Origin: Hemiscyllium ocellatum
Taxonomy: Eukaryota
Direction of reading: 5' to 3'
Assembly (NCBI RefSeq): GCF_020745735.1
Contig: NC_083409.1
Location: 24,200,048 to 24,264,047 of the forward strand
Length of the DNA stretch: 64,000 nucleotides
Shown: positions 16,291-49,616 of the stretch, piece by piece
Layout of the letters: each line of letters starts with the position of its first letter
How positions within the stretch are numbered: the stretch's first letter is position 1
Position numbers and translations under genes: made by a program
Notes under the pieces: generated by a model
The model's input: the letters and a program-made list of their open reading frames with translations, nothing else
What the model was told of the DNA's origin: nothing
Databases searched by the model: none

Positions 16291-16339
16291 GCGTCCTTGT
16301 GCATTGTAACAATTCTGTGATTGTGAGATTGAGCAGAGT

Positions 16340-16809: not shown

Positions 16810-16848
16810 CACAGTGAGAGCTCCCAGTGCAGAGGCTGTACAAAAACC
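16810..16848 (+). other. 23-bp-spacer RSS of J1 (canonical)
   Basis: CACAGTG at 16810-16816, 23-nt spacer, ACAAAAACC at 16840-16848. Confidence 0.98.
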
Positions 16849-17292
16849 TCTGCTCTCTGCTTCCCCCTGTCACTCTCAACCTCTCCCTGTCTCTCTCTGT
16901 CTCTGTCTATTCTTGGTCAATCTCATTCACTCCCTACCCCTCTCTGTCTCTCCCTCATTCATGTGTCTTTATCTCTCTGTCTCCCTGGGTTGTGTCCAGC
17001 TACTCTCGGGGGTTTGTGAAATTTAGTTTTCATTGTTAAATCTTGCAGCTGTTCTTCACATGCGGCCATGGAGTGTAAGAGGGAAACTTGAGGCCTTCAG
17101 TGAGCGGTGGACACCACAGGGACTGGAGTGTGAAGTGGACAGTGACAATCCCAGCATGAGGTAATTTGTTCAATTTACTTTATATATAACTGTGGATGTG
17201 TCAGTGCAGGAGGTGGGACTGTCTGTCCATTATTATGCATTTCATATAACTGTTGGATGTGTCAGTACAGGAGGTGGTGTTGTGCGTGTTGA

Positions 17293-17320
17293 GGTTTTTA
17301 TATGGCTCTGTATCACTGTA
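17293..17320 (-). other. 12-bp-spacer RSS of V1 (defective)
   Basis: TACAGTG (17320-17314), 12 nt, ATAAAAACC (17301-17293). The first C of the RAG-critical CAC is mutated. Confidence 0.95.
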
Positions 17321-17616
17321 AAGGCTGCTGCTATACTGCTGACAGTAATAGTCAGCGACATCTTCATTCTGAACATTGCTGATTGTCAGGGTGAAACTGG
17401 TCCCTGATACACTGCCGGTGAATCGATCGGAGACTCCTGTGAATCGATTTGTTGCATAATAGATCAGGAGAGAGGGTTTGTGACCTTCTCGCTGCTGGTA
17501 CCAAGCAAGGTTGCTGCTAATGCTTTGACTGGCCGTACAGGTGAGTGTTGCAGTCTGGCCCAGTCCCACTGACAGCACCGGGGGAGACTGGGTCATGATG
17601 ATGTCCCCACTGATAC
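17321..17616 (-). CDS. IGKV: V exon V1 (11-nt leader part 2 plus 95-codon kappa-type V region)
   Basis: ccctcag|GT ATC AGT GGG then [38 protein letters not shown]...[15 protein letters not shown]; conserved Cys/Trp/Cys. Confidence 0.97.
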
Positions 17617-17800
17617 CTGAGGGGTCAGAGAGAAACACAGTGAAGTCAGAACTGTCATAGAAAGAGCCAGTCAAATGAGAGATTGTTTGAGACACTGAGC
17701 ATTCCTCTGGTTTCAGCATTTTCCCTTCAATCACAAGTCAGTGGAATTGGAGTGAAATGGAGAGCAGCGAAAGATTCAAGGTGGAAGGAGAGATTTGTAC

Positions 17801-17849
17801 CTGCAACACAGAATGCCAGGGGCCAGATTAACTGGATGTGTGAAATCAT
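17801..17849 (-). CDS. IGKV: Leader exon L1 (MISHIQLIWPLAFCVA-G)
   Basis: cacaccATG context, 49 nt, phase-1 donor G|GTACAA, 184-nt intron to the V exon. Confidence 0.93.
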
Positions 17850-17904
17850 GGTGTGTGCTCCTGTCCCTGTGCCTGGTTCCTGATAAACTCTCCCTTCACT
17901 GGGC

Positions 17905-18005
17905 TCTGCTTTATAAAGCTGCAGCCTGTGAGAGTCTGGGTGTTCCTCAGTATGTAAATGGCATCAGGCAGAGAGAGCCACGTCAGCCCCTGACACTTCC
18001 ACTTC
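17905..18005 (-). promoter_or_regulatory. V1 promoter: TATA, octamer variant, CRE/G-box and ETS site
   Basis: GCTTTATAAAGC at 17908-17919, ATTTACAT at 17959-17952, TGACGTGG at 17985-17978, GGAAGTG at 18000-17994. Confidence 0.75.
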
Positions 18006-18039
18006 TCTCTCGCTCTCTCTCTCTCAGAGAATCATTGAT

Positions 18040-18720
18040 GTGAACAACATTGAATGAGGCCATTTGGCCCATTATGTCTGTGCTGGGAAACAAAGATCTG
18101 ATGACACTAATCCCATCCTCCAGCTCTTGGCCCATTACCCTGGGGGCTACAGCAACACAAGGGAAGATCTAAACACTGCTCCAATGTCACGAGAGTTTGT
18201 GACTCAGTCAGACTTTCAGGCAGTGAGTTCAAGACTCCCACCTCCCTCTGGGTGAAAACATTTCTCCTCAATTCTCCTCTCACTCCAATTTGACTGGGCC
18301 TGGACTCACTCAAGTTCAGAAGGATGAGAGGGAATCTGATTGAAATGTATAAAATTCTAACAGGGCTGGGCAGGGAGGAGGTTTCCCCTGGTTGGGAAGT
18401 CATGGGACCCAGTCTCAGGGGGATACAGGGTAGACAATTTAGGACTGAGATGAGGAAACATTTCTTCACTCAAAGGGGAGGACAACTGTGGAACTCAAGG
18501 AACTGAATAAATTCAAGAAAAAGAGAGAGATAATTGTTTTGCATTTTAACAGCATGAAGGGAATGGGGAGAAAGCAGGAATATGGTTTTGAGGTGGAGGA
18601 TCAGCCATGATCATACTGAATGACAGAGCAGAATGAAAGGGCCAAAAGGCCTACTCCAGTTCCGAGTTTCTATGTGTCCATGTCTGTGTTACCTGGGACA
18701 CAGGTTATTGAGTCCTTTAC
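18040..18720. mobile_element. CR1 3'-end fragments in both orientations upstream of V1
   Basis: ELRRNVFTQREVGVLNSLPE (minus) and MRGNLIEMYKILTGL (plus). The paralog is at 48,060-48,870. Confidence 0.8.
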
Positions 18721-18929
18721 TGATGTGTAAAGTGCCTTCTTACCCACGCTACCACTTCCCCAAATAATCTTATCCCCCTCTATCATGTCCCCTCTCAGCC
18801 TTCACTGCTTCAAGGAAACAATCCCAACCTTTCCAAGATTTCCCCACAGCTGACCCTTCATCCCAGGCAGCATCTTGGTAAATCTCTGCACCCTCTCAAG
18901 TACAATCACATCCTTCCCAGAATGTGGTG

Positions 18930-19296
18930 ACCAGGACCTATCCACCTCTCTCTCTCTGTCTCACATCTGTCACTTCTTTCTCTCTATCCCTCTTTCTCCT
19001 ACTGTTAATAGCTTTCATGTTCTCTCTCTCTCTCACTCTGTCTCATAGCCACTCTCCCCAATTCACTCATGCTTTCTCACTCCATCTCATCATTATTTTT
19101 CCATCTCTCACTGTCTCCATAACTCCTTCCCTCTCTCGCTTCAATTTAAATCCTCTATTATCTCTCCTCTCTATACCTCCCTCTGTCTCTCTCCCTCCCT
19201 CTCTCCATTCCCAATCTACAGTCGTACTCCCTCCCTCTCTGTCATTCTGTTTCTAATCATACTCATGTCTCTCACTTTCTTTCACTCTCTCTCTGT

Positions 19297-19349
<53 letters not shown>

Positions 19350-19390
19350 ACAGACACTCACCCTTTGTCTCTGACTCACTTCTCTCTCTT
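18930..19390. repeat. CT-rich low-complexity tract with (CA)n at about 19,299-19,347
   Basis: Seen directly; the paralogous GA-rich tract is at 47,165-47,870. Confidence 0.9.
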
Positions 19391-19895
19391 TCTCAGTGTC
19401 CCAGGTTGTGGCAGTTGAATTCAGGATGAATCTCCCTCTCTCTGCCCCACTCATGGATGTTAACCCTTGACCCCAGAAGCATGTTTTCTCCTGGAGTAAG
19501 GCCCCATTTTCCACATTGACCTGGATTTGGCCTCTCTCAGAAAGATGGCTAGATTCTTGTCAAATGAAGGGCAGTTCTGTGCTGTTGGCCTATTCTCACT
19601 GGGGACTGGTTTGGACACAAAGCTCATTCCATGAAGACCCAGCAGAGAGAGGAGATCCTCAGGCCATCAGTATGACCTGGAGGGACAGGACAGGCTCTGA
19701 CTCACTGATCTAGCCTGTCCATTCACAACATGTTCCAATCCCTTTCCCTCTCCTACCCCTCTCCTTCCCTTTCCATGATCAGTCTCTGAGTCAGGGTGTT
19801 TTACTGGGATGTGGGTTGAACCATTACATAGTTAAAACAGAAAGGAACTGAACCCCACACTCACCTTGGAGTCTATGATGCACTGGACTCTCCTA

Positions 19896-21535
19896 CAGAG
19901 TCCAGTAAACATGGCCTCCTTCCTGCAGGAGCCTCCACTAGAGATCAGTAAACATTGGTCTCCTTCTGACTGGACACTCCAAAGGAGAAGAGTAAACATG
20001 TACCTCTTTCAGACTGGATCGTCTAGTAGAGACCAGTAAACATGGACCTCCTTCCTGCTGGAACCTCCAACACAGACCAGTAAACATGGATCTCCTTCTG
20101 ACTGGATCCTCCAAGACAGATCAGTAAATATGGGCCTCCTAATCACTGGAACCTCCAATGGAGATGAGTAGATGGTTGAGTTTTTGAAGAAGTAAGCAAG
20201 AAGATAGGTAAAGATAGAGGAGTTCACTCTGTCTACATGGAGTTAATACAAGGTTCCCCATGGTAGACTGCTCAGTAAGATTATATCACAGAGGATCCAG
20301 GGAGAGCTAACCAATTGGATATAAAATTGGCCTGTTGGTAGGAGGCTGAGGCTGGTGAGAGAGGGTTGTTCTTCAGACTGGAGGCCAGTGACCAACTGTC
20401 TGTCACAAGAATCGATCCTGGATGCACTGTTGTTCATCATTTATATGAACAATTTGGATGAGAAAATAGAAGGAATGGTCAGTAAGTTTGTGGCTGACGT
20501 TAAAATTGTTGGCATCATGGACAGGGAAGAAGGTTATCCAAGAGTGCAATGACATCTTGATCAACTGGGCCAGTGGGTCAACAAATCCAGATGGAAATTT
20601 TGATAAATGGAAGGAGTTGCATTTTGGTAAGACAAACCAGGGCAGGAATTACACAATTAATGGTAGAGCCATGGGGAGTGTTGTTGAACAGAGAGACTGA
20701 GGGGTGCAGGTACATAGTTCCTTGGAAGTGGGGTCACAGGTAGACAGGGTGGTGAAGAAGGTATTTGGCACGCTCACCTTCACTGGTCAAAGCAGGGAGT
20801 ACAGGAGCTGTACGAGGCATTGGGAAGGCCACGTTTGGGCACAGTACATTTCTGCTCATCCTGGTATAGGAAGGAACTTATGACAGTGGTTTGAATAAAA
20901 GAAAGATTAACAGGGATGTTATCAAGATTGGAGGATTTGAATTACAAGATGAGGATGAATAGGCCAAGATGTTTTTCCAGGAAATGCAGAAGATTGAGGG
21001 GTGACCTTATAGAGGTTGTAGAATCATGAGGGTCATAGATAAGGTGAATAGTCAAAGTCTTTTCCCCAGGGTAGGAGAGTCCAATACTAGAAGGAGGAGG
21101 CTTAAGTTGAGAGGGAAAAGATTTAGTAGGAAACTGAGAGGCAACATTTTCACACAGAGGTTAGTGTGTATGTGCAATGAGCTGACAGAAGAATTCATAG
21201 AGGTGAGTACAATTACTACATTTCGAGGACATTTTTACAGGAACATGGATAGGAAGGATTTAGAGAGAATTGGGCCAAACACATGCAAATGGGACTAGTT
21301 CAGTTTTGGATACGTGGTTGGCATGGATGAGTTGAGATGTACGGCCTGATCCCATGCTGTAAACCTCTATGACTCTTTGATGATGTATACATGGGACACT
21401 TTCCCATAGAACCAGTAAACATGGACCTCTTTCCACTGGAACCTCCAATAGACACAAATAAACAGGGCCTCCTTCCCACTGGATGCTCCAGAAGAGAACA
21501 GTAAACATGGCCCTCCTTCCCTCAGGACTGTCCAG
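19896..21535. repeat. About 44-bp minisatellite (about 11 units) split by a CR1 RT fragment (about 20,171-21,388)
   Basis: The cagtaaacatgg core occurs at 19903, 19946, 19990, 20034, 20078, 20122 and 20166, then at 21413, 21457 and 21499. Confidence 0.9.
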
Positions 21536-22779
21536 CACCTGAGCTGCAAACCCCACATCCTCTCCATCATGTATGCCTCTTATTTCAAACTCAACAACAT
21601 TGTCTCTGCACTACCTCTGCCCCTTGACCACAGAAACCCTAATTCCTGCTCGTCCTGCCCCCTAACTCTATGATTCCAATGTCCTCCCCCAGCTTCCTAA
21701 AGCCATATTCCATAAACTCCAACTTGTCTGATATGGAGTGGCCCCTCCCTGTCTTATCCATCTGTCATTCCAGAATGACCCCTGACCTCACTGCCAGCCA
21801 AATGCCTCCATGGCCTCCCTCCTCCCTCCGTCTGTGTCCTGCTGCAGACTCACATTCCCTCCCTCCCCCTTCCATCTTCTGTCTCTGGTCTCCTGCCCAT
21901 TGCTGCTTGCTCCAACCCACCATTGACAGCAGAGCCTTCAGACCCCTACAGCATGCTCTCTGACCTCCTGCCCTTGATCCCTTCCCCTCTCAATGGTTGT
22001 GCTATTGAATATACTGTTCAATCCCATCACTTTTGGTTCACTGTTCCCTTGCCATTGATCTGCTGAATTATTCCTCATCAGTAAATCGAGTCTGGCCTGT
22101 TCCCTGAGTTGGTTCAAGAGAGTTTTCCTTGAGAAAACACTCTTCTGTTGTCTGTTTCTCCCATACTTTGTGTAAAGGTGAGTCGAAGTGCATGTAAGCT
22201 CTTATACAGCACAGACAGAGGTCACTGGGCTGATTGTGACTGTTAGTCAAATGAGTCCAATGAGTCCCATTTCCTCAGCCTTTCCTGTATAACCCTGCAA
22301 TTATTTCCTTTTCAGCTATTTCTCAAAATGCCCTTTTGAAAGTTGCTGTTGAATCCACTTCCACTCACCTTGCAGACAGTCATCATGAACTCGCTGGATA
22401 AAAAACATTCCTAACTTCTCTCTTGTCCTTCAGACTCTTTCTGAAATGTGTGCCCTCTGGTTACTGACCCTCCTGCCTGGAGAAACAATTTGTCCTGTAT
22501 TTACTGCACCCAGACTCTCTAATTGTGAACCCCTCATTGAGTGAGATCTATTTCCAGCACAGGGGGAGAACATTCAGCCTGTCAGGTAAATGTTGTCATT
22601 TCATGGAGCAATCTAGTCAGTCCCACCCTCTCCCCTACTCGACCCCCAGGGCCTTGCAGGTTTATTTCCATCAAGAGCCCATCCAATCTGCCATTGCAAT
22701 CACTGAGTGTCTTCACCCGCCTCACCTGAATGGGCACTAATTTCCAAGACTTTGCCAATTGCTGCTAAAATCAAAGTTC

Positions 22780-23360
22780 TTTCCTGACATTCCATATCTC
22801 TTGCCCAAAAGAATGTAAGATAATCTCAAAAGATTATCTCCACACGGACTGTGCGGTGGTCACCCTTACTGATACTGTCATGGACAGATACACCACCAGC
22901 AGGCAGATTGGTGAGGGTGATAGTGAGTATGTTTTTCCCTTTTGTTGGTTCCCTCACCACCTGCCCCAGGTCTAGTCTAGCAGCTGAATCAGGTGGAGTG
23001 TGACCAGTTTGCTCAGTAGTGATGCTTCTGAGCAGCTCTTGATGGTGGGCTTTGAAGTCCCTGACTCAGAGTATATCCTGCATCATTCCCATCCTCTGTG
23101 CTCCCTCCAAGTGTTGTTCTACATGGAGGAGGACTGACTGCTCAGTTGAGGTTGGAGTGGAGGGCGGTGCTATGTGGTAATCAGCAGGAGGTTTCCTTCC
23201 CCATGTTTGACCTGCTGTCATGAGGCTTCATGGATTCCATAGTTAATGGTGAGGACTCTCAGGGCAACTCCCTTCCGACTGTACACACCACTGTGTTGCC
23301 TCCCCTGCTTGGTCTATCCTGCCAGTTATAAACTGAATGAGGGAAAAATTGTGTGCAGGT
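22780..23360 (-). mobile_element. Non-LTR retroelement endonuclease fragment (a second LINE family; related copy at 45,000-46,340)
   Basis: Shares gactttgaagtccc...gtgttgttc...ggcaactccc segments with 45,700-46,000. APE-like peptide IGKSDHHTV is present in the longer copy. Confidence 0.65.
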
Positions 23361-23494
23361 TTCACAGCTTGGAGACAGAGCTGCTGCTGGATTCTACTTC
23401 TGATCTCCGAGTGCAGGTGTATGTGTTTGTGAGAGAGTGACTGACACCTTTTCCAAAAATGCGCTGTTTCTGCAAAAAATAAATCCCAGAACCA

Positions 23495-23790
23495 GCCTCC
23501 TGTGCTGTCAGATTCCAGGGAGTGCAGATGGTTCACAGTTTTCTCCCGTCTCAGTAACAAACACCCAGCTGCTCCGAGCTCCTTCTTTCACTTCCTCTTT
23601 TGGTGAAGTTTCAACCTTGTGCTCTGACAGTCTTTGCAGTTATTTTTTACACTGGGGCTTTCTGCTGTGGTCAGAATCTCTAATAATAAGTGTCCAATCA
23701 GTGATAATCACACCAGCTAAGAGCAGTCAGGACTGAGGAGCCAGGCTCACTGTGAAACATATTGGGAAGATCAAAGCCATCCTCTTCAGA
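23495..23790. promoter_or_regulatory. Candidate upstream B-cell enhancer, copy 1
   Basis: CAGATG at 23525, CAGCTG at 23566, ETS-IRF composite TTTCACTTCCTC at 23586-23597, RUNX TGTGGT at 23666, CCAAT at 23694. About 94% identical to 43,620-43,920. Confidence 0.55.
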
Positions 23791-24384
23791 TCCTGGTATA
23801 AACTCCATCCCTCTCCCTGAGCACTGTCTGCTGTTCAACCAGACTTTTTACAAACTGGGTCTCATGTTTGAGAATGATCTAAGCCCCATATCTTCCATAT
23901 CACAAAGATCAGCCACTGAAAATCTCAGCCATGTTTATGGGGCTCCAAACATGACCATTCCAATGGCTGATGCACATCACAGCCACTGCCCTCCGTATCC
24001 TTCAGTTCATCCAAAATTCTGCAGCCCGTATCCAAGCTTGCACCAAGTCCCGTTCCCACAACCCCCTGCACCCTGTGCCTAGATTGGCTCCTGGTCGAGC
24101 AACACCTCGATTTTCAAATTCTCATCCTTGTTCTCAAATCCCTCTCTGCCCTCTACCCTCCCTATCTCTGTAACCTCCTCCAAGCTGCCTCACTCCATGT
24201 GGTCAGCAATCTTGGATAATTGGTTCTCTATTCCTTCATCCAAGTCATTGAGAAATATTGTGAAATACTGAGGCCCCTGCACAAATCCCTGGGGACACCA
24301 CTATTCACATCTTGTTCATTGGAGAGCACACACATTATCCCTCTTCTCTGTCTCCTACCTCCAAACTAATTCCTAACCAAAGAC

Positions 24385-27300
24385 AAATACTTTTCTATCA
24401 CTGTCTTGATGATAGGAAGCAGCGGGTAATATTGGAAGGATGCTTGTCAGACTGGAGGTGTGTGTTGAGTGGAGTGCCTCAGGGCTCAGTGCTGGCCCCA
24501 TTACTGTTTGTTATCAAGATTAATGATTTGGATGAGAATCTGTAAGGCATGATTAGTAAGTTTGATGCGCAGGTCAGGTGAATTGGCTATGTTAAATTGG
24601 CCATAGTCTTAGGTACATTAGTCAGAGGGAAATGGGTCTAGGTGAATTACTCTTCAGAGGGTCGGTGTGGATTGGTTGGGCCGAAGACCTGTTTCGACAC
24701 TGTAGGGAATCTAATCTCTAATTTGTACAGGATGTCAGTGAGGTCGCACTTGGAATATTGTATTCAGTTTGGTCACCTTGTTATAGGAAGGATATTACTA
24801 AACCAGAAAGAGTACAGAAGAAATTTGCAAGGATGTTGCCTGGACTCAACAATCTGAGTTATAGGGAGAGGTTAGGCAAGTTAGGACTTTTTTCTTAGCG
24901 CGTAGGAGACTGGTGGGGGAACTTTTAGAAGTGTATAAGATCATGAGAGACATGGATAGGGTTGGGGAAACGAGGATGAGAGGGCATCAGTTTAGTGTTG
25001 GAGAGGAATGAATAAAAGGGAACCTGAGGGGCAACATTTTTACACAGAGGGTGGCACGCATGTGGAATGAGATGCCAGCTGAAGTGATTGAGGTGGATAT
25101 ATTAACAACATTTAAAAGACATTTGGACAAATACATAGATAGGAAAACATTTGAAGGACATGGGCCAAGTGCAGGGAAATGGGGTTAGCATGGATGGACA
25201 TTTTGGTCAGCACGGTCCAGTTTGAGCCAAAGGGCCTGTCTCTGTGCTGTAGGACTCGATAGCTCTAAGACTCTATAATTCCATATGTTTCCATGTTTAT
25301 GAACAGTCTCTCAAACATAGAAACAAAGGAACTAGGAGCAAGAGGAAGCCATTCAGCCCTTCGAGTTGGCTCTGCCATTCAATATGACCATGGCTGATCA
25401 TCCAACTTAGTCCCCTGCTCCCATTTTTTCTCCGTAAAATTTAACCCCTTTAGTCCTAAGAAAATACTTATCCTCTCTTGAAAATATTGAATGTTTTGGG
25501 CTCAACCGCTTTCTGTGACAGAATATTCCACAAGCTTCCCAGTCTCTGGCTGAAGAAATGTCTCCTCAGCTCAGTCTGAAATAACCTTTCCCTTTTCTTT
25601 AAACCATAACTCGTAGTTCTGGATTCCCCAGTCATCAGGAACATCCTCCCTGTGTTGTTCTAGTCTTGTCCTGTTCGGATTTTCAAGGTTACAATATGAT
25701 TCCTTTCAATCTTCTAAGCGCCAATGAATATAATCCCAACTGATCCAGTTTCTCATCAGATCTAAGTGCTGTCCTCCCAGGAATCAGTCTGGTAAACCTT
25801 CGCTGCCCTCCCTCCACAGCCAGAACATCCTTCCTCAGATAAGGAGCCCGAAACTACCCACGACAGAATCATAAAATCTCACAGTACAGAGGAGGCCCTT
25901 CAGCCCATTAACTGTGTACCAGCCAAACTACACTAAACCTATACCAGTCCCACTTTCCAACATGAGGCCCATAGCTTGAATGTTATGACATTTCAACTGC
26001 TCACCCAAGTACATTTTAAAGTTTGTGAGGTTTCCCACCTCAACTCCCCTCCCAGGCTGTGCACTCCAGATGCACACCAGCCTCTGGATGAAAAACATTT
26101 TCTTCAAAACATCTTGAAACCTCCTATCTTTCACATTGAATGTGAGCCAACTTGTTATTGACCCTCCCACGAATGAGAACAGCTGCTTTCTCTCCTCCCT
26201 GTCCATTCCCCTCATAACCTTATACACCTCTATCAGGTCCCCCCTCCACCTTCTCTGCTCTGAAGAAAACAACCCGAGATGATCCAATTTCTCTTCATCA
26301 CTGAAAGGTTCCATTCCACACAACATCCTAGTGATTCCCCTCTGCACCCCGTCCAGTGCAATCACCTCCTGCCTACAGTGTGGTGACCTGAACTGCTGTG
26401 GTCTAACCAATGTTCTACTTAACTGCAACATATCCTCCTGCTTTTATAACCAATACCTGACATGACAAAGGCAAGTGTCCCATATGCCTTTATAACTGCT
26501 CTGTTAACCTGTCTTGCCATATTCAGCGATCAGTGGACAAGCACCCAAGATCACGCTGTTCCTTAGAGCTTCCTCAGTTCAAAGAACAAAGAACAATGAA
26601 AATTACAGCACAAGAATTGGCCCTTTTGCCCTAATAGCCTGCGCTGGTCCATATCCTCCATCTAAACCTGTCATCAATTTTCCAAGTTTCTGTCTCCCTT
26701 TGCTCCCTGCCCATCCATGTATCTATCTAGATATATCTTAAAGAATGCAATTGTGCCTGCCTCTACCACCTCCACTGGCAACGTGTTCCAGGACCAATCA
26801 CCCTCTGTGTGAAGAACTTTCCATACATATCTCCCTTAAATGTTTCCACTCTCACTTTGAACTCATGACCCAGAGTAATTGAGTCCCTCACACTGGGAAA
26901 AAGTTTCTTGCTATCCACCCTGTCTACACCTCTCATGATTTTGTAGACGTCAATCAGGTCCCCCCTCAATGTTCGACTTTCTAATGAAAATAATCCTAAT
27001 CTACTCAACCTCTCTTCATAGCTAGTGCCCTCCATACCAGGCAATCCTGGTAACCTCCTCTGCACCCTCTCCAAAGCATCTACATCCTTCTGGCTGTGTG
27101 GCGACCAGAACTGTGGGCAGTATTCCAAATCTGGCCAAGCCAAAGTCCGATATAATTCTCACAAGACCTGCCAACTCTTGTACTGAATACCATGTTTGAT
27201 GAAGGAAAGTATGCCATATGCCTTCTTGACCACTCTGTCGATCTGTGTTGCCACCTCCAGGGTGCAATGGACCTGAACACCCAGGTCTCTCTGGCCATCA

Positions 27301-30600: not shown

Positions 30601-30844
30601 CTTTGTTCCAACTATAACATTATAACACTTGTGTGGAACTTCCTTGAATGTCATCTGGACGTCCATATAAACAACACATTACCTTATCTCACACATTAGT
30701 GACCTCGTTAAAACATGTAACCAGGTTAGTTAAAGATGTCTGACCCTTTTAAATCCATGCTGATTTCGTCTGATCTGTTCACATTTGTCAGACATTCTGT
30801 CTCTAAACAGATTCAATTACTTCCCCACAATAGACATTCAACGA

Positions 30845-31390: not shown

Positions 31391-31464
31391 TCAATGGAGA
31401 TGTTCATTGTGAGTGAGGTTAGTAAACAGCTAGTACTGACACAAGGGGCTGAACAGCCTCCTCC

Positions 31465-39199: not shown

Positions 39200-42100
39200 A
39201 TTTCAGCACTTATCCATGATCCCTATTTTCTGTCACCTGTCACTCAACCAATTTCGGTATGGCAGTATTTTAGCCTCAATTCTGTGGATTTCTAACTGAG
39301 TTGACAGTTTCTTACATGGGATTTTATCAAATGCCTTCTGGAAGTCCCTATAAACAACATCCATTGACATTACTGTGTCCAGTAATTTTGTTTCCTCTTC
39401 AAAAATGTTCAATGAGGTTTTTCACCATGACCAACTTGTCATGAATCCATGCTGATTCTCCCTGATTAACTGACAATTTTCAAGGTCTTCAGTTACCCCC
39501 ATCCTTGATTATAGACTACAACAATTTCCACACCACAAACGTTGGCTTAGTGACCTGTAATTCCCTGGCTTTTCTCTAACATCCTTGTTAAATGTGAAAT
39601 GAAATTTGCAATTTTCCAATTCAGAGGTACGACTCCTGAATCCAGGTAACTCTGAAAGATTATAGTCAGGGTGCCTGCAATGTGGTCTATTTCTACTTTA
39701 TCACCCTCAGGTCCTGAGGATTTGTCACTCTTTAGTTCCATTATTTTCCTTATTACTCATGTTATATTGACATTAACTTTATTTAGGTGACACAGTGGTT
39801 AGCACTGCTGCCTCACAGCACCAGCGTCCCCAGGTTCGATTCCAGTCTTGGGTAACTGCCTGTGTGGAGTTTGCACATTGTCTGCATGGGTTTCCTCCTA
39901 CTGTCCAAAGATGTGCAGGTCAGGTGAATTGGCCATACTAAATTGCCCATAGTGTTAGGTGCATTAGTCAAAGGGAAAATGGGTCTGGGTGGGTTACTCT
40001 TCGAAGGGTCAGTGTGGACTGGTTGGGCCAAAAGGCATGTTTGCACACTGCAGGGAATCTCATCAGTCCCTGACACAGACCCTCTGATAATTCCTTTGGG
40101 CCTTCAAGCAAGTCCTCTTCCTTTTCTATTGCAAATCTTGAGGTAAAGTATTTATTTAACATGTCTGTCATTTCCCCATTGTCACTGACAATATCTCTCA
40201 CTTACAGTCTTTAATGGCCAACATTGCTCCTGACCTCCCAGCTTCCCTTTTATGGAACTGTAACATTTCTCCTTATTGATTTTGTTATCCCTAACATGTT
40301 TCCTTTCAGAATCCCTTTTGGTAGCTCCTAGAAGCAGATATGTGGCCCTTTTGTATTCTTCCCATTCAGCGGAATCTGTCCTTATTTTTTGCTTTTCTGT
40401 TAGCCTTTTTTAAACATTTTATTCTTTCCCTGATCTCTTTAATTGACCATTGTTGTTTGTTTGCTTTTCCCTCTCAGGTATAAACTGGCTTTGTTTTGTG
40501 TTGAATGTTCCTTTAAACATTCCCCACTGTTCTTCAGTTATTTTACCCATGAGCAGATTTTCCCAGTTTACTGTGGGCAGTCTCTGTCTCATCTCATTAA
40601 AGTCGGCCTTACCTTAAACTCAAATTCTAGCAGCTGATTCATGCGTTTTACTTTCAAATGCGACACTGAGCTAGATCATGTTATGATCACTATTTGATAA
40701 ATATTCATGCACAAATAGTTACGAACTAAATCTGGCTCGTTATTCATTACTAATTCCAACATTGCTTGTCCCCTTGTTGTATCCAGGACCTATTGCTGTT
40801 GAAAACTATTCTGGACACACAGCAGCAATTCACTACCTTTCTGACAGAGGGCTTGTCTGTCTCCCAATCTAAGTTAAAGTTAAACTTCACCATTAATAAT
40901 ACACTGGCTTTGCTACACACTTGTCTAGTTCCTCCATTTATATAATCCAGCACCTCAGAGCTACTGTCAGGGGGCTCTGTATCCAACATCTACTACAGTT
41001 TTCGATCCTTTCCTGCTCCTCAGTCCCACTGAGTGTTTTCTCCTCATTATGACCTCCCTCACCATTGAAGCCATTTTTTCCCTCATCAATGAAGCTGCTC
41101 CACCTCTTCTGCCATTTCCCTATATCCATCCTGTGAACCTTCTAACCCGATAGATATCGTTCCCAATCTGAATGATTCTGCAACTATGGCTCAGTAATTG
41201 ATCCGATACCATAATCTTAAATTTGAACTTGTGCCTGCAGATTATTGTATTTATTCCTTACGCTCCGTGCATTCGTATATAGAACTCGTATTTGGTCCAT
41301 TCACTGGAATCTGTTCCTCAGCACTGATGCTGTATTCACCTCTTTCTTATTTCTCTCCATCTGTTTAATCAATATCCTTCTGATAGCTTTCCTGATATTG
41401 TTCAAATAGGGCCTTTTGCCAATTTTTGCTGATGTTGTTGGTCCCAACACAGACAACAACAACTGGATCCTCAACCCCCCCATCCCACCTCCTCCCACCT
41501 CCGCCCCCCCCAACCCCCCCCAAGTCTGTTATAATTAAAAGCTGGCTCGAGATGCCCTTACCTTGAAACCAGGCAGGCAACACACCATGTGGGGCTCTCA
41601 ATCCTGCTCAAAAAGGATGCTATCAGTTCCCCTCATTATCAAGACCTCTCTTTTCTTTGTGCTCCCCCAGTCTGAGTGGCCTCCTGGACCATGGTGCAGT
41701 GGTTTCCTTCGTTCATTCATAGGAAATGGACATCTCTGGCCAAGCCAGCAATGACTGCCCTTAGGAGTCATCGAATCATAGAATCCATACCGTGTGAAAC
41801 AGGCCATTCAGACCAATGAGTCCACACCAACATTCTGAAGAGCATCCCACCCAGACTTGTCTCCCTACCTTATCCCTGTAAATCTGCATCTCCCATGGCT
41901 AATGCACCTAACCTACACATCCCTACATTTTCCCCAGTTTAGGCATTATAATTTCTGCTCTATCTTTATCTTTTCATATAATGACTTTGAAACTTACAGA
42001 GTTATGGTCACTGTCACCAAAATCCTCAAATTACATTTGCCCATTCTCCCGACAAACCTTTTCCTCATTTACACGGGAGCAAGTTTATGTTATTCCTGTT

Positions 42101-42530
42101 AGACAAGGAGCTGAGGCACCTGTAAGGCTAAATCCAGGCTGCATCGGCCTGTTCACTTTTGGTCACACCCTCCTGTCCCTGACCACTGGCCATAATTTGA
42201 AGTATTTAACCTACAAGGTGTGACTGTCTCCCCAAACACAGTGTCCAGGTAACTCTCCCCCTCCCTGATGTGTCACAGTGTTTGAAGCTCAGATTCCAGC
42301 TCATCAACTCTGAGCTGGAGTGCCTTGAGCAACCAACACTTGCTGTAGATGTGGTCACTCTGAGCTACAATGGGCTCCACCAGCTTCCCCATCGTGCAAT
42401 TACTACACATCGCCTGGCCCTGTATGTGGAAATTATTTGACGAGTTTTGAATTTATATTTTAAAATTTGCTGCTGGTCTTTAGTTTTTAATCTGTAAAAT
42501 ATTTCCGTCAAGGAGACAGAGAAGGTGCCA
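39200..42530 (-). mobile_element. Degenerate CR1 (RT, APE, ORF1) with an HE1-like V-SINE at 39,785-40,070
   Basis: VVPLNWKIANF, FNFNLDWET, VVVVCVGTNNISK (SGNH). The SINE has A/B boxes cagtggttagc / ggttcgattcc. Confidence 0.8.
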
Positions 42531-43619
42531 GCACAGGAGGAGGCTGTTCAGCCCCTCGTGTCAGTGCTAGCTGTTTACGAGCCTCAATTATAATGAACAT
42601 CTCCATTGAATGTCTGTTGTCAGGAAGTGATTGAGTCTGTTTTTAGAGACAGAATAATGGACAAATATGATCTGGTCTGAGAGAATCAGCATGAATTGAC
42701 AAAGGTTCAGACATCTTTAACTAACCGGGTTACACTTCGTTAGGAGCTCACTAGTGTGGGATATAAGGTAATGTCGATGGCTATTGTCCATAGGGAATTC
42801 CAAAAGACATTTAAGAATGTTCCACAGAAGAAACATTGATTCAGATCTTACACTCCACAACCATCTGATGAAGGAGCAGCGCTCCAAACGCTGATGCTTC
42901 CAAACAAAGCTGTTGCATTAGAACCTGGTGTTCTGAGATTTTTAACATTTACACGACAGTCCAACACTGGCATCTCCAAATCATGGAATTGGATGGAATT
43001 TGAGAAATGCATTTACCTTGGGTCAGGAATGGGTCTGCCTAGGAGACAGAGAGGAAGGATAATGTGCATGTGTTCCAATGAGCCAGATGTGAGTAGTGGT
43101 ATTCCCAGGGATCTGTGCTGGGACCTCAGCTTTTCACGATATTTCTCAATGACTTGGAAGAAGAAACAGAGAGCCATATATCCAAGATTATCGATCACAG
43201 AGTGAGGCACCTTGGAGGAGGTCACAAAGATAGGGCGGGTGGAAGAACAGGGAGCAGATTGAGTACAAGGATGAGAATTTCAAAATCGAGGTGTTGCTGG
43301 ACCAAGAGCTGATGTCAGTCAGTGAGGATTGTGGTGGTCATGGTGGGGTGGGGCGGTGTGGGCAGGAGTGTGGGGTGGACTTGGTGTGAGTTTGAACATA
43401 GACAGCAGAGTTTGGGATGAGGTGATGTTTATGGAAGTAAATAGCTGTGATGTGGGCCTGGATAACATTGGAATGGTCACAAAAACATGGTTGAGATTTT
43501 CAGTGGTTGATATGTGGAGGATTTGTGCCTCAAATCAGCCCCAAAGATGAGGACAAAATTGTTAAGAGTCTGGTTGATCTGCAGTCACTGCTCAGGGAGA
43601 GGGATGGAGTTTGTACTGG

Positions 43620-43920
43620 GAGCTGAAGAGGATGACTTTGATCTTCCCAATGTGTTTCCCAGTGAGCCTGGCTCCTCAGCCCTGACTGCTCTTAGCTGCT
43701 GAGATTGTCACTGATTGGGCACTTATTATTAGAGATTCTGACCACAGCAGAAAGCCCCAGTGTAACAAATAACTGTAAAGACTGTCAGATCGCAAGGTTG
43801 AAACTTCACCAACAGGGGAAGTGAAAGAAGGAGCTCGGAGCAGCTGGATGTTTGTTACTGAGACGGGAGAAAACTGTGAATCATCTGCACTCCCTGGAAT
43901 CTGACAGCACAGGAGGAGGC
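43620..43920. promoter_or_regulatory. Candidate upstream B-cell enhancer, copy 2
   Basis: ATTGG at 43714, ACCACA at 43741, GGAAGTGAAA at 43817-43826, CAGCTG at 43841, CATCTG at 43882. All motifs of copy 1 are retained. Confidence 0.55.
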
Positions 43921-44999
43921 CATTGAACCCATCAATCCTTTGAATGACCCAGTTAGTCCCACTGCTTCCCCCATCTTTCCCCGTAACCCAGCAAATCTTT
44001 CCTTTACAGTTCAATCTCCAATTCTCTCTTATAGACCTCATGTCCACAGAGTGAGACTGCCCTGAACCTGGGCTTCAAATTGGCATCTCATTCATTCATT
44101 GGGAGATAAACTGCCTGGGCTGGGAAATGAAGTTCAGGATCCTGAACATTCCCTCTCCCTTCCTGAGGAACACTTCATTTGGTTTTGTCTATTCACTTGT
44201 GGGAAGTGGGCTTCACCGGCTGGGCCAACATTTTTTACCCTGTCCCTAGTTGCCCTGGAGAAGGTGGTGGGAAGCTGCCATCTTGAATTGTTATCGTCCA
44301 CAAGCTGTAAGTTGACCCACAATGCCAGCATTTTAACCCAGCAAGGCTGAGGGATCAGCGACATATTTCCAAGTCCAGATGCTAAGCTTTTTCGAGGGGA
44401 ACTTGCAGCTCACAGTGTTCCCATGTATCTGCTGCTCTTGTTCTAAATGGAAGTGAATGTGGGTTTGGAGGGAAACCAAAAGAACTGCAGATGCTGTAAA
44501 TCCGAGACAAAATAGAAAGTGCTGGAAAAGCTCAGCAGGTCTGGCAGCATCTGTGAAGAGAAATCAGAGTTAATATTTCATCCTCAACCCGAAATGTTAA
44601 TTCTGATTTCTCTCCAAGATGCTGCCTGACCTGCAGAGCTTTTCCTGCAATTTCTATTTTTGTCCATGGGTTTGGAAGGTGCTATCTGAAGATCGGTGAT
44701 GAATTTCTGCAGTGCATCTTGTCGATAATACACACTGCTGCTATGAAGCATCAGTGACGGTGAGTTTGGATACTTTGAGAATGTGATGACAATCAAGGAG
44801 TTTGCTTTGCTCTGGATAGTATCAAGCTTTTTGAGTGGATAAGAAAGACATAGGATACAATAGACATAGATAGGAAAGACTTCAAGGGATATGTGTGAAA
44901 CACAGGCAAATAAGATGAGTCCACTTCAGAAAACCTGGTCAGCGTGTAGAAGTTTGGCTTAAGGGTTTGTTTCTGTGCTGTATGACTCTGTGACACAAT

Positions 45000-46340
45000 C
45001 AATCTATGAATGTTGTTGCAGCTGCACCTGTCCAGGCAAGTGGGGAGTATTTGCTCCCACTCCTGACTTGGTTGACAGGCTTTGGGGGATCAGGAGGTGA
45101 ATTACTGGATGCAGTATTTCTAGCCTCGAACTTGCTCTTGTAACCACTGTGTTTCTTTGGTGAATCCAGTTGTGTTTCTGGTCAATGGCACCTCAAGAAT
45201 GTTGATAGTGGGGATTCAGTGATGGTAATAGCATTGATTGTCAAGGGTCGATGTTAAGACTGTCTCTGATTGGTAATGGTGATTGGCTGGCATTTGCATG
45301 GCACCAATGGGAAATGTCACTTCTCAGACAAAACCTGGATATTGTCCAGATATTGTTACATTTGCACGTGGACTGCGTCAGTATCTGAGGAGTTGAGAAT
45401 AGTGCTGAGCATTGTGCAATCTTTGGCAATCATCCTCATTTACGAGTTTGCCTTGAGTTGCAATATCTGTTCGGAGTCTGTCCTATTTAGTACGGTGATA
45501 GTACCACACAACACAATGGAGGGGATTCTCAATGTGAAGGTCAGTCTTTGTTTCCACAAGGACTGTGTGATGGTCACTCTTACCAATACTGTCAAGGATA
45601 GGTGCATCTACAGCCACAAGATTGGTGAGGGTGGGTTCAAGCATCTTTTTCCATCTTTTTGGTTCCAGCTGCAGAGCCAGTCCCTCAGCTACATCCACGA
45701 GGAACCAACCAGCTCGATCAGTAATGCTGCTGCCGAGCCACTCTCAGTGGTGGGCATTGAAACCCCCACCCAGAGTACACTCTCTGCTGTCATCACCCTC
45801 CAAATGCTTCCTCCAAATGTTGTTCAACATCCAGGAGAGACTGATTCATCAGCCGAGGGAGCAAGGTATCTTGTAATCACCAAGAGGTTTCCTCGCCCAT
45901 GTTTAACCTGGTGTCATGAGTCTTTACGGGGTCCAGAGCCAACTTTGAGACTTCCCAGGGTAACTCCCTCCTGACTGTCGACCACTGTGTCATCAGCTCT
46001 GCTGGGTCTGCCTTTCTGGTGGGACAGAACACATGCAGGGACAGTGATGGTGGTGTCTGGAGCATTGTCTGTAAGGTATGGTTCTGTGAGTATGACTGTG
46101 TCAGGCTGCTGCTTGAGTCATCTGTAAGACAGCTCTCCTGAATTTGGCCCTAGCTCCCAGATGTCAGTAAGGAGGATGGAGCAGGGTAGACAGGGCTGTT
46201 TCTGTCATTGTCTTTTCGGTGTCTAGATCGATGCCTATGGTCCGTCCGGTCTCATTTCTTTATTGAAACATTGTCATAATTGATACAACTGAGAGCCTTG
46301 CTCGGCCATTTCAGAGGGCACTAGAGAGTCAACCACATTG
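45000..46340 (-). mobile_element. Non-LTR retroelement APE/RT fragment
   Basis: MLEPTLTNL...IGKSDHHTVLVETK and PDIVILTE-like frames. Confidence 0.7.
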
Positions 46341-47164
46341 CTAGAGGACAGTGCCGTGTACCCCGGCAGTACATTCCGACCTCCCCCACTTCCCCATTCT
46401 GTATATGGAAGGCAGAAGCCTGCCGGCAGGATATTCAACCGCAGGAGCTATCACAGCCCGTGCGCAATTCTGTCCCCACGTTAAATCCACACAAAACTTG
46501 AATTCACATAACACCCTCAATGTCCAAGCATTCCAAGAATGTTCACAAAGTTGCAGTAAGAGGGATGGGGGAGAGGGTGGAGGAACATAAGAACTAGGAG
46601 CAGGAGCAGTCAATTCAGCCCCTCGAACCCACCCCACCATTTAATACAATCATGGCTGATCCCATCTCAGACTAAACTCCACTTTCCTGCTCATTCTCCA
46701 TCATCCTTTAACCCATTAATCATTAAATATCTGTTCATCTCCTCCTTGGTGTGAGACAGGGAAGGGACCACTCCATTTCAGAAAAGACTGATCATGGAAG
46801 GGGAAGGAGAGGGCAAGAGATTGGAACATGTTGTGAATGGACAGGATGGGTCAGTGGGTCAGAGCCTGTCCTGTTCCTCCAACTCACACTGATGGCCTGA
46901 GGATCTCCTCTCTCTGCTAGGCCTTCATGGAATGAGGTTTGTGTCCAAATCAGTCCCCAGTGAGAATAGGCCAACAGTACAGAACTGCCCTTCATTTGAC
47001 CAGAATCTGCCCATCTTCCTGAGAGAGGCCAAACCCTGGTCAACGTGGATATAGGACCTTACTCCAGGAGAAGACAGGAGTCAAGGGTTAACATCCATTA
47101 GTGGGGCAGAGCAGAGGGAGATTTATCCTGCATTCAACTGTCACCACCCAGGACACTGTCAGAA

Positions 47165-47870
47165 AGAGAGAGCATTGAGGCAGAGAGAGAGAGATGGAGG
47201 GAAAAATTGTGTGTGTGTGCGTGTGTGTGAGTGAGAGAGAGAGAGCGAGAAAGAAAGAAAGAAAGTGAGAGAGAGAGAGAGATAGAGGGACGAGCATCTG
47301 ATACGGTATAAGATATGTGAGGGGACCGAGAGGGGTAGAGGGAGGTAGAAATGGTGAGGTTGGGGGATAGAGAGAGAAAAACAAGATGTGAGACAGTGTG
47401 ACTGAGAGGGATGGAGAGAGACAAAGAGACAAGGAGAGAGAGAGAAAGAGACAGGATGGGTGTGAGACAAAGCATGAAGAGAGTTGAGAGGGAGGGTAGG
47501 GTTGAGTGTGAGAGAGAGAGAGATGAGTATGGGTAGATTTATAATGACAGAGAGAGAGGGAGAGAGACTGTAAATTGGGAGGGAAGGAGAGAGAAAGAGG
47601 GAGGAATAGAGAGTGACAGATAACAATTGAAGGCTTTTAATTGAAGTGAGAGAGGGAGTGAGTAACAGAGACAGTGAGAAATGGAGAAACAGATGATAAG
47701 ATGGAGTGAGAAAGCATCAGTGAGTTGGAGAGAGTGGCTATGAGACAGAGTGTGTGTGTGTGAGAGAGAGAGAGAGAGGGAGAGAACATGAAAGAGATTA
47801 ACAGTGGAAGAGAGAGATAGAGGTAGAGAGAAAAAATGGCAGATGCGAGTCAGAGAGAGAGAGAGGGACA
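47165..47870. repeat. GA-rich low-complexity / microsatellite tract
   Basis: Seen directly; paralog of 18,930-19,390. Confidence 0.9.
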
Positions 47871-48899
47871 GGTCCTGGTCACCACACTCTGGGAAGAATG
47901 TGATTGTACCTGAGTGGGCACAGGGGAGATTTCCCAGGATGCTGCCTAAATGTGAGCTTTGAGCAGTGAAGGCGTAAAAGGGACCTGATAGAGAGGGATA
48001 ACATTATTCAGGACAGTGATAGGGTGGGTAGGATGGCACTTTTTACATGAGTAAAGGACTTCATAACCTGGTACAGAGATTGAAGGTAACACAGACATGG
48101 ACACGTAGAAACAGCAGGCCATTCGGCCCTTTGAGTCTGCTCTGTCATTCAGTATGATCATGGCTGTATCAATTTGTGAATGTCATAATTTCTTCGAGGG
48201 TCGGTGTGGGCTTGTCGGGCCAAATGGCCTGTTTCCACACTGTAGGCATTCTATGATCTATGGCTGATCCTCTCTCTCAAAGCCATATTCCTGCCTTCTC
48301 CCCATTCTCTTCAAGTTGTTAAAATGCAAAACAATTATCTCTCTTGTTTTCTTGAATATATAGTTCCTTGTCCTCCACAGCCTTCAGTGGTAGAGAATTC
48401 CACAGGTCGACCACTCTCTGAGTGAAGAAATGTTTCCTCATCTCAGTCCTAAATGGTCTACCCTGTATCCCCCTGAGCCTGTGTCTCCTGGTTCCAGACT
48501 CCCCAACCAGGGGAAACCTCCTCCCTGCCCAGCCCTGTTACAATTTTATATGTTTCAATCAGATCCCCTCTCATCGTTCTGAACACGAGTGAGTCCATGG
48601 CCAGGCGAGTTGGAGAGTGAGAGGAGAGTTGAGAAGAAATGTTTTCACCCAGAGGGTGGTGGGAGTCTGGAACTCACTGCCTGAAAGGCTGGTTGAGTCA
48701 CAAACTCTCGTGACATTGGAGCAGTGTTTAGATATTCCCTTGTGTTGCTGTAGCCCCCAGGTAATGGGTCAAGAGCTGGAGGATGGGATTAGTGTCATCA
48801 GATCTTTGTCTACGAGCACAGACACAATGGGCCAAATGGCCTCATTCAGTGCTGTTCACATCAATGACTGAGACAAAGCGAGTGAGATATAGAGAGAGA

Positions 48900-49000
48900 G
48901 AGAGAAGAGGAAGTGTGAGGGGCTGACGTGGCCCAATGACACTTACATACAGAGGAACACCCAGTCAGACTCTCACAGGCTGCAGCTTTATAAAGCAGAG
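48900..49000 (+). promoter_or_regulatory. V2 promoter: PU.1-type ETS site, CRE/G-box, degenerate octamer and TATA
   Basis: AAGAGGAAGTG at 48905-48915, TGACGTGG at 48924-48931, ACTTACAT at 48941-48948, TATAAA at 48989-48994. Confidence 0.75.
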
Positions 49001-49054
49001 CCCAATGAAGGGAGAGTTTATCAGGAACCAGGCACAGGGACAGGAGCACACACC

Positions 49055-49103
49055 ATGATTTCACACATCCAGCTGATCTGGCCCCTGGCATTGTGTGTCG
49101 CAG
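49055..49103 (+). CDS. IGKV: Leader exon L2 (MISHIQLIWPLALCVA-G)
   Basis: cacaccATG context, 49 nt, donor G|GTACAA, 186-nt intron. Confidence 0.93.
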
Positions 49104-49289
49104 GTACAAATCTCTCTCCTTCCACCTTGAATCTTTAGCTGCTCTCCATTTCACTCCAATTCCACTGACTTGTGATTGAAGGGAAAATGCTGAAACCAGA
49201 GGAATGCTCAGTGTCTCCAACAATCTCTCATTTGACCGTCTCTTTCTGTGAAAGTTCTGACTTCACTGTGTTTCTCTCTGATCCCTCAG

Positions 49290-49588
49290 GTATTAGTGGG
49301 GACATCAGCATGACCCAGTCTCCCCCGGTGCTGTCAGTGGGACTGGGCCAGACTGCAACACTCACCTGTACGGCCAGTCAATCTGTTAGCAAGTATGTTA
49401 ACTGGTACCAGCAGCGAGAAGGTCAGGAACCCTCTCTCCTGATCTATTATGCAACAACTCGATTCACAGGAGTCTCCGATCGATTCACCGGCAGTGGATC
49501 AGGAACCAGTTTCACCCTGACAATCACCAACGTTCACAATGAGGATGTCGCTGACTATTACTGTCAGCAGTATAGCAGCTACCCTCGA
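49290..49588 (+). CDS. IGKV: V exon V2 (leader part 2 plus 96-codon kappa-type V region), apparently functional
   Basis: ccctcag|GT ATT AGT GGG then [38 protein letters not shown]...[11 protein letters not shown]. Confidence 0.97.
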
Positions 49589-49616
49589 CACAGTGACACA
49601 GAGCCGTACAAAAACC
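49589..49616 (+). other. 12-RSS of V2 (canonical)
   Basis: CACAGTG at 49589-49595, 12 nt, ACAAAAACC at 49608-49616. V-12/J-23 is the kappa configuration. Confidence 0.98.

What the first reader, a model, noticed from the sequence alone, without database searches (positions are those of the whole stretch)
16810..49616. Head-to-head kappa clusters only ~31 kb apart create a 12/23-compatible inter-cluster inversion (V2 to J1)
Seen: the V2 12-RSS (49589-49616) and the J1 23-RSS (16810-16848) are both canonical and point the same way on the plus strand. RAG could therefore invert 16,810-49,588 (about 32.8 kb) and join V2 to J1-C1. The reciprocal V1-J2 join is blocked by the V1 heptamer lesion. Established: shark Ig miniloci are generally described as rearranging within a cluster, whereas inversional inter-cluster joining is known for teleost light chains. 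Inference: this pair may behave as a two-cluster unit, with cluster 1 acting as an alternative or non-productive sink for V2.
Basis: partly seen in the sequence, partly recalled or inferred. Interest (0 to 1): 0.75.

Follow-up and report, generated by a model that had tools for sequence, protein, structure and literature searches.

The report
Back-to-back shark kappa antibody mini-genes
Two copies of a shark antibody light-chain mini-gene face away from each other 31 kb apart, so the cutting enzyme could in principle flip the DNA between them and join one copy's V to the other's J, but nothing shows this happens, the receiving copy is decaying, and the layout is reportedly common in this genome.

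Summary
Cluster 1 lies on the minus strand (V1 17849-17321, J1 16809-16775, C1 8158-7830). Cluster 2 lies on the plus strand (V2 49055-49588, J2 50074-50108, C2 61682-62010). They are the arms of an old inverted duplication, 83-91% identical.

The V2 12-RSS (49589-49616) and the J1 23-RSS (16810-16848) both match the consensus at 16 of 16 positions. Both read coding-heptamer-spacer-nonamer on the plus strand. Cutting both and inverting 16810-49588 (32,779 bp) would give a V2-J1 coding joint and a retained signal joint. The V1 RSS is crippled (TACAGTG, ATAAAAACC), so the reciprocal V1-J2 join is disfavoured.

V2 has its own perfect J2 418 bp away. Cluster 1 has a GC splice donor after J1 and has lost the C-terminal cysteine, which is kept in every shark kappa chain retrieved here with a complete C-terminus. 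J1's intact RSS is not better conserved than neutral DNA.

Earlier notes of this scan report the same head-to-head layout several times on other DNA of this genome. Most likely this is an ordinary paralogous pair with rare, mostly non-productive cross-joining.

The parts
7830..8158 (-). C1 exon of cluster 1, including the stop codon. It begins (S)HDNSQ and ends SEFV. The interchain Cys is replaced by Phe.
   Evidence: Six-frame scan and tblastn. Alignment with C2 and other shark kappa chains.
16775..16809 (-). J1 coding segment, encoding YTFGKGTKLRL. It is followed by a non-canonical donor GCAAGT at 16774-16769.
   Evidence: Sequence read. Alignment with J2, which has GTAAGT.
16810..16848 (-). 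J1 23-RSS. Heptamer and nonamer are both consensus and the spacer is 23 bp. On the plus strand it reads CACAGTG-23-ACAAAAACC.
   Evidence: Pattern search, 0 mismatches.
17293..17320 (-). V1 12-RSS with two lesions: heptamer TACAGTG (position 1 C to T) and nonamer ATAAAAACC.
   Evidence: Pattern search, 2 mismatches. Sequence read.
17321..17849 (-). V1 gene: leader 17849-17801, intron, exon 2 17616-17321. The ORF is intact, but FR3 reads GSVSG instead of GSGSG.
16810..49588 (.). Interval that a V2-to-J1 inversion would flip (32,779 bp). It contains V1, decayed LINE fragments and no other recognisable gene.
   Evidence: Geometry. Length. Pfam scan of spacer ORFs.
49055..49588 (+). V2 gene: leader 49055-49103, intron, exon 2 49290-49588. 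The ORF is intact and CDR1 reads QSVSKYVN.
49589..49616 (+). V2 12-RSS: consensus CACAGTG, 12-bp spacer, ACAAAAACC.
   Evidence: Pattern search, 0 mismatches.
50035..50073 (+). J2 23-RSS, consensus. It lies 418 bp from the V2 RSS in deletional orientation.
50074..50108 (+). J2 coding segment, with canonical donor GTAAGT at 50109-50114.
61682..62010 (+). C2 exon of cluster 2. It begins (T)RENSQ and ends SECV. The interchain Cys is present.
5183..19764 (.). Left arm of the inverted duplication. It pairs with 63724-46796 at 83-91% identity, plus an island at 23496-23939 that pairs with 43916-43480.
   Evidence: Self-blastn on the minus strand.
46796..63724 (.). Right arm of the inverted duplication.
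   Evidence: Self-blastn on the minus strand.

Best explanation
An old inverted segmental duplication produced two divergently transcribed kappa-type V-J-C miniloci of a cartilaginous fish. Cluster 2 is intact and should assemble in the usual way, by deletional V2-to-J2 joining across 418 bp. Cluster 1 is degenerating. Its V1 RSS has lost the obligatory first C of the heptamer. The splice donor after J1 is GC. C1 has lost the C-terminal cysteine and changed other residues that are invariant elsewhere. J1 still carries a consensus 23-RSS that is co-oriented with V2's consensus 12-RSS. RAG could therefore invert 32.8 kb and make a V2-J1-C1 gene, leaving a chromosomal signal joint and placing V1 upstream of J2. 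This is shown as a possibility only. By inference it is a rare by-product, because it competes with a partner about 67 times closer and needs both clusters to be open in the same cell. It would also be mostly non-productive. The layout is a by-product of duplication, not a device selected for editing: each V and each J can still be used only once, so the pair gains no extra rearrangement attempt.
For: The inverted-duplication arms are 83-91% identical. The cluster 1 lesions were polarised with the RSS consensus and with other shark kappa chains. All retrieved chains with a complete C-terminus end SEC[VA]. Those with a recognisable FR3 keep GSGSG (one divergent chain has GSQSG). Those with a recognisable J-C junction have R after it and PPS. 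CAC is required for RAG cleavage (PMC9723617). J1 RSS conservation is within neutral expectation: P = 0.085 for at most 1 mismatch in 39 bp, and a 44% chance that one lineage keeps all 16 core positions. No signal-joint relic was found. No CTCF-type motif occurs above chance. Mouse data show that strong kappa RSSs allow inversional joining at about 60-300 kb (PMC13190342). Zebrafish data show inter-cluster inversions up to 81 kb (PMC3014032). These make the event feasible.
Against: There are no somatic data of any kind for this species, so the frequency of V2-J1 joining could be anything from zero to substantial. With V1 unable to be cleaved, J1 has no competitor 12-RSS in its own cluster, which could raise the share of J1 breaks that resolve with V2. 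GC-AG introns can be spliced, and light chains without the terminal Cys can associate non-covalently, so V2-J1-C1 is not necessarily dead. J coding plus RSS together are slightly better conserved than neutral DNA (P = 0.04), though this does not separate the two lineages.
Confidence: 0.65

Rival explanations
1. The pair is a working two-cluster recombination unit. Inversional V2-to-J1 joining, and V swapping between the arms, occurs regularly and adds V-J-C combinations or serves as an editing or silencing route.
For: Both RSSs are consensus and co-oriented. The clusters are only 31 kb apart, with no CTCF-type motif between them. There are precedents in zebrafish IgL and mouse Igk. The same layout is reported repeatedly in this genome by earlier scan notes, which are unchecked.
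Against: No transcript or DNA junction evidence is available. J2 lies 418 bp from V2. The inversion gives no extra rearrangement attempt, because each RSS is consumed once. J1 and J2 encode the same peptide, so the diversity gain is nil. The cluster 1 lesions argue against selection on its product. J1 RSS conservation is not beyond neutral. A follow-up on another pair in this genome concluded that joining is intra-cluster (not tested here).
Confidence: 0.12
2. Cluster 1 is a silent pseudogene cluster that is never opened in lymphocytes. No recombination centre forms on J1, its RSS is inert, and V2-J1 joining does not occur at all.
For: Cluster 1 carries five derived lesions and cluster 2 carries none of that kind. 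In sharks only a few miniloci are activated per B cell, and the heavy-chain miniloci studied rearrange within themselves (PMC2435157).
Against: The V1 promoter region, leader, splice sites and ORFs are intact and about 92% identical to those of cluster 2. Nothing in the sequence predicts transcriptional silence. RAG is promiscuous at accessible consensus RSSs.
Confidence: 0.2
3. The head-to-head arrangement is an assembly artefact, that is, a false inverted duplication of a single cluster.
For: Large inverted repeats in repetitive Ig arrays are a known failure mode of assemblers. This is general knowledge and was not tested here.
Against: The arms differ by 9-17% with many indels and arm-specific transposon insertions. 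That is far more than haplotype or read-error divergence. The window contains no N runs.
Confidence: 0.03

Closest known systems
Cartilaginous-fish kappa (type III / NS4) light-chain miniloci (nurse shark NS4, Lee et al. 2000, PMC2193156; reviews PMC5192425, PMC12227049)
   Same: [quoted passage not shown] The V carries a 12-RSS and the J a 23-RSS. The V-J gap is about 0.4 kb. V2 is 78-87% identical to kappa chains of Chiloscyllium, Hemiscyllium, Cetorhinus, Scyliorhinus, Ginglymostoma and Heterodontus. The J peptide is the same FGKGTKLRL.
   Different: The papers I could search describe clusters as autonomous, distant and of the same polarity. Here two clusters are divergent and only 31 kb apart. 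The J-C introns are long (8.6 and 11.6 kb) and carry transposon insertions.
Zebrafish IgL inter-cluster inversional rearrangement (Zimmerman et al. 2008, PMC3014032)
   Same: There are multiple V-J-C clusters on one chromosome. A V lies in opposite polarity to the J-C of a neighbouring cluster. The RSSs are 12/23-compatible, so inversion would move a V into another cluster. The distance (33 kb) is within the documented range (up to 81 kb).
   Different: In zebrafish the joins were proven with cDNA clones matched to BAC sequence. Here nothing beyond geometry is shown. In zebrafish many Vs are inverted relative to their own J, whereas here each V also has a same-polarity J 0.4 kb away.
Mouse and human Igk inversional V-to-J joining (PMC13190342)
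   Same: Kappa-type strong consensus RSSs. A V of opposite orientation joins by inversion, with the signal joint retained on the chromosome.
   Different: The mammalian locus has a single J-C unit, a Cer/Sis CTCF platform and more than 100 Vs. Here there are two complete units and no CTCF-type motif above chance.
Mouse Ig lambda two-cluster locus
   Same: Two V-J-C units lie in cis with compatible RSSs, and joins between units are rare compared with joins within a unit (as cited in PMC3014032).
   Different: The lambda units are tandem, so cross-joins are deletional rather than inversional.

Membership tests
Cartilaginous-fish Ig kappa (type III/NS4) V-J-C minilocus | V-set exon and C1-set exon homologous to shark kappa chains | tested here: met
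   V2 is 78-87% identical to annotated kappa chains of six shark genera. C1 and C2 are 73-82% identical to shark kappa C regions.
Cartilaginous-fish Ig kappa (type III/NS4) V-J-C minilocus | [quoted passage not shown] | tested here: met
   Both clusters fit. The V-J gaps are 444 and 418 bp.
Cartilaginous-fish Ig kappa (type III/NS4) V-J-C minilocus | Kappa-type signals: 12-RSS on V and 23-RSS on J | tested here: met
   The V1 signal is mutated.
Cartilaginous-fish Ig kappa (type III/NS4) V-J-C minilocus | Rearrangement confined to the cluster | not testable with these tools
Inter-cluster inversional IgL rearrangement (zebrafish type) | 12/23-compatible RSSs of a V and of a J from another cluster in the same polarity on one chromosome | tested here: met
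   The V2 12-RSS and the J1 23-RSS both read heptamer to nonamer on the plus strand.
Inter-cluster inversional IgL rearrangement (zebrafish type) | Transcripts or DNA in which a V of one cluster is joined to the J-C of another | not testable with these tools
The protein collection returned no chain more than 87% identical to V2, so none that could be assigned to this species.
Inter-cluster inversional IgL rearrangement (zebrafish type) | Chromosomally retained signal joint | tested here: not met
   The germline window has no heptamer-to-heptamer relic at 2 mismatches or fewer. This only excludes a past germline event, not somatic ones.
Mammalian-type Igk diffusion platform | CTCF-site element (Cer/Sis-like) between the V and J domains | tested here: not met
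   There are 0 CTCF core matches at 1 mismatch or fewer. At 2 mismatches or fewer there are 8 against 6.9 expected.
Non-functional 'ORF'-class Ig gene cluster (cluster 1) | Open reading frames intact, but defects in the RSS, a splice site or conserved residues | tested here: met
   TACAGTG heptamer. GC donor. GSVSG in V1, and H for R, F for S and F for the terminal Cys in C1, compared with the other shark kappa chains retrieved here.

The most novel reading that the evidence does not exclude
Shark kappa miniloci are not fully autonomous. In head-to-head pairs such as this one, RAG joins the V of one cluster to the J-C of its neighbour by inversion at a measurable rate. That would be the first inter-cluster V(D)J rearrangement shown in a cartilaginous fish. 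This pair would be a natural reporter for it: V1 cannot be cleaved, so any rearranged J1 must have taken a V from outside its own cluster.
Probability: 0.2. Interest if true: 0.6.

Novelty: new member of a known kind. Interest (0 to 1): 0.3.

Why it matters
Textbook and review accounts hold that shark antibody genes are independent miniloci that rearrange only within themselves. Part of the argument is that clusters are far apart and of one polarity. This window shows, at sequence level, two kappa clusters of opposite polarity only 31 kb apart with fully compatible signals. That removes the structural argument and makes the autonomy question directly testable by PCR or repertoire sequencing. 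This pair suits such a test well. V1's signal is dead, and J1 and C1 carry private markers: GGG in J, then S-H-D, PPF and SEF in C. Any use of J1 is therefore informative. Otherwise the locus is an ordinary paralogous pair, one member of which is on its way to becoming a pseudogene.

Tried and rejected

2. A protein-database test for expressed C1-type or V2-type chains was uninformative. The C1 query found only 3 foreign hits at 75-83% identity. The V2 query found shark kappa chains of other species at 87% or less and none from this animal.

3. I looked for neighbouring-cluster layout in a related shark through the look-up of encoding contigs. It returned no DNA and no coordinates because the file was too large.

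4. A search for a signal-joint relic that would mark a past germline inversion found nothing.

5. A search for a CTCF-type insulator between the clusters found nothing above chance.

6. A test for selection on the J1 RSS was not significant.

7. I rejected an assembly artefact because the arms are only 83-91% identical.

8. I looked for other genes in the spacer and found only a decayed LINE reverse-transcriptase fragment.

9. Hsu and Criscitiello 2006 is not held in the library.
Full report
**Anatomy**

The window holds two kappa-type light-chain miniloci.

- Cluster 1 is on the minus strand.
  - V1 leader is at 17849-17801 and V1 exon 2 at 17616-17321.
  - The V1 12-RSS is at 17320-17293.
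  - The J1 23-RSS is at 16848-16810 and J1 coding at 16809-16775.
  - The C1 exon is at 8158-7830.
- Cluster 2 is on the plus strand.
  - V2 leader is at 49055-49103 and V2 exon 2 at 49290-49588.
  - The V2 12-RSS is at 49589-49616.
  - The J2 23-RSS is at 50035-50073 and J2 coding at 50074-50108.
  - The C2 exon is at 61682-62010.

The two genes are transcribed away from each other, and their start codons are 31,206 bp apart. The window has no N runs.

**Origin of the pair**

A self-comparison shows that the clusters are the arms of a large inverted duplication. The stretch 5183-19764 pairs with 63724-46796 in a chain of blocks that are 82-91% identical. A further island at 23496-23939 pairs with 43916-43480. 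The centre of the spacer no longer aligns. It contains decayed LINE reverse-transcriptase fragments and no other recognisable gene. Divergence at this level rules out a haplotype or assembly artefact.

**Check of the observation**

Searches with exact 12-bp and 23-bp spacers find four RSSs that sit at V or J boundaries.

| Signal | Coordinates | Match to consensus |
|---|---|---|
| V2 12-RSS | 49589-49616 | perfect |
| J1 23-RSS | 16810-16848 | perfect |
| J2 23-RSS | 50035-50073 | perfect |
| V1 12-RSS | 17293-17320 | 2 mismatches (TACAGTG, ATAAAAACC) |

On the plus strand, both the J1 signal and the V2 signal read coding end, heptamer, spacer, nonamer. Signals of the same polarity join by inversion.

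- Cutting at 16809/16810 and at 49588/49589 and flipping the 32,779 bp between them puts V2 next to J1-C1 on the minus strand. That is the coding joint.
- It also fuses the two heptamers at the other end. That is a signal joint kept on the chromosome.
- V1 is carried to a position upstream of J2.

The V1 lesion is real as well. CAC at heptamer positions 1-3 is required for RAG cleavage (PMC9723617; PMC12711392). The reciprocal V1-J2 inversion should therefore be strongly disfavoured.

**State of the two clusters**

Cluster 2 has no visible defect. Both RSSs are consensus, the donor after J2 is GTAAGT, and C2 ends SECV.

Cluster 1 has open reading frames, but it carries changes at functionally important positions. 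Comparison with the RSS consensus and with other shark kappa chains shows that these changes are derived.

- The V1 heptamer and nonamer are both mutated.
- The donor after J1 is GCAAGT instead of GTAAGT. An alternative GT four bases downstream would shift the C frame.
- V1 FR3 reads GSVSG, where the other shark kappa chains with a recognisable FR3 read GSGSG (one divergent chain reads GSQSG).
- In C1, H replaces the R that follows the J-C junction in every other chain where the junction was found.
- In C1, PPF replaces PPS.
- C1 ends SEF where every other chain with a complete C-terminus ends SEC, the cysteine that links to the heavy chain.

C2 also has a few private changes (H, SK), but none at invariant positions. 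Cluster 1 therefore fits the 'open reading frame but defective signals' class.

**Is the J1 signal kept by selection?**

The neutral mismatch rate between the arms, taken from six non-coding segments, is 10.1%.

- The J 23-RSS pair has 1 mismatch in 39 bp (P = 0.085).
- Keeping all 16 heptamer and nonamer positions in both copies has P = 0.18.
- One lineage alone would keep all 16 with a probability of about 0.44.
- J coding plus RSS together give P = 0.04, but this does not separate the two lineages.

The intact J1 signal therefore needs no special explanation.

**How it most likely works**

The structural possibility is shown. The rest is inferred.

V2's own partner J2 is 418 bp away in deletional orientation. 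This is the spacing at which shark miniloci are known to rearrange: about 400 bp between segments, with the heavy-chain miniloci studied rearranging within the minilocus (PMC2435157). J1 is about 67 times further away. It can compete only if cluster 1 is open in the same cell.

Mouse work shows that strong kappa RSSs do allow inversional joining over roughly 60-300 kb by short-range diffusion (PMC13190342). Zebrafish cDNAs prove inter-cluster inversions up to 81 kb (PMC3014032). The event is therefore feasible.

V1 cannot be cleaved, so V2 carries the only consensus 12-RSS found in this window in cis to J1. This could raise V2's share of any J1 breaks.

The product would have to use a GC donor and a C region without the interchain cysteine. 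The inversion would also leave J2-C2 with the crippled V1. The net effect would be to disable both clusters on that chromosome. Each RSS is consumed once whichever way the pair rearranges, and J1 and J2 encode the same peptide. The layout therefore offers no extra attempt and no real gain in diversity.

I read the layout as a by-product of an inverted duplication, with cross-joining rare and mostly non-productive.

**What could not be tested**

- The protein collection returned no light chain that could be assigned to this species. The best V2 match was 87% (Chiloscyllium punctatum), and the best C1 match was 83% over half the query (82% over 91% of it).
- A look-up of a related shark's locus returned no DNA.
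- No signal-joint relic is present in the germline window.
- No CTCF-type motif is present above chance.

**Context from the scan**

Earlier notes are unchecked by me except where stated. They report the same head-to-head kappa layout, with spacing of about 28-52 kb, on other DNA of this genome (s1-228448, s1-198121, s1-213734, s1-213783, s1-216802). One follow-up judged the layout routine in an array of about 200 copies and judged joining to be intra-cluster. So the scan has found this before on other DNA. This window's particular feature is that one partner is decaying.

**Comparison with the literature**

Reviews state that shark V(D)J joining occurs within clusters, that segments share one polarity, and that the genomic distribution of clusters is poorly known (PMC5192425; PMC12227049; PMC3014032). 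Early NS4 work used clones of 2-6 kb and could not see linkage (PMC2193156). I found no paper that describes divergent kappa pairs or inter-cluster light-chain joins in a cartilaginous fish.

**Verdict**

This is a new member of a known kind: Ig light-chain clusters whose polarity permits inversional cross-joining, as in teleosts and in mammalian Igk. Interest is modest. The pair would be a convenient natural reporter for testing whether shark miniloci are autonomous, but nothing here shows that cross-joining takes place.

Noticed in passing
window 1855-2334: This is a third copy of the roughly 480-bp stretch that lies about 90-560 bp downstream of each C exon. It matches 7261-7740 in inverted orientation and 62100-62574 in direct orientation. 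No C exon lies beside it. It could be a relic of a tail-to-tail neighbour cluster or a dispersed repeat.
   Followed up: partly
window 23496-23939 and 43480-43916: An island about 5.6 kb upstream of each V is kept at 88% identity in both arms, while the surrounding spacer no longer aligns. It could be a shared regulatory element, as another first-reader note proposes, or simply a surviving piece of the duplication.
   Followed up: no
window 27430-27822 (minus) and neighbouring ORFs 25.9-28.3 kb: Decayed LINE-type reverse-transcriptase fragments lie in the inter-cluster spacer (RVT_1, E = 8e-9). The J-C introns (8.6 and 11.6 kb) also differ through arm-specific insertions.
   Followed up: partly
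window about 17950 (minus) and about 48960 (plus): The octamer-like motif upstream of the TATA box reads ATTTACAT before V1 but ACTTACAT before V2. The intact cluster therefore has the less canonical octamer.
   Followed up: no
window 49655-49693: A weak 23-RSS-like site (CACAGTT, 23 bp, ACAAAGTCC; 3 mismatches) lies 39 bp after the V2 RSS in the same polarity. It is at chance level.
   Followed up: no
P0001, P0002: Shark kappa light-chain fragments are filed in public databases under bacterial names (Aeromonas veronii, Salmonella enterica). They are evidently host or sample contamination in those assemblies.
   Followed up: no
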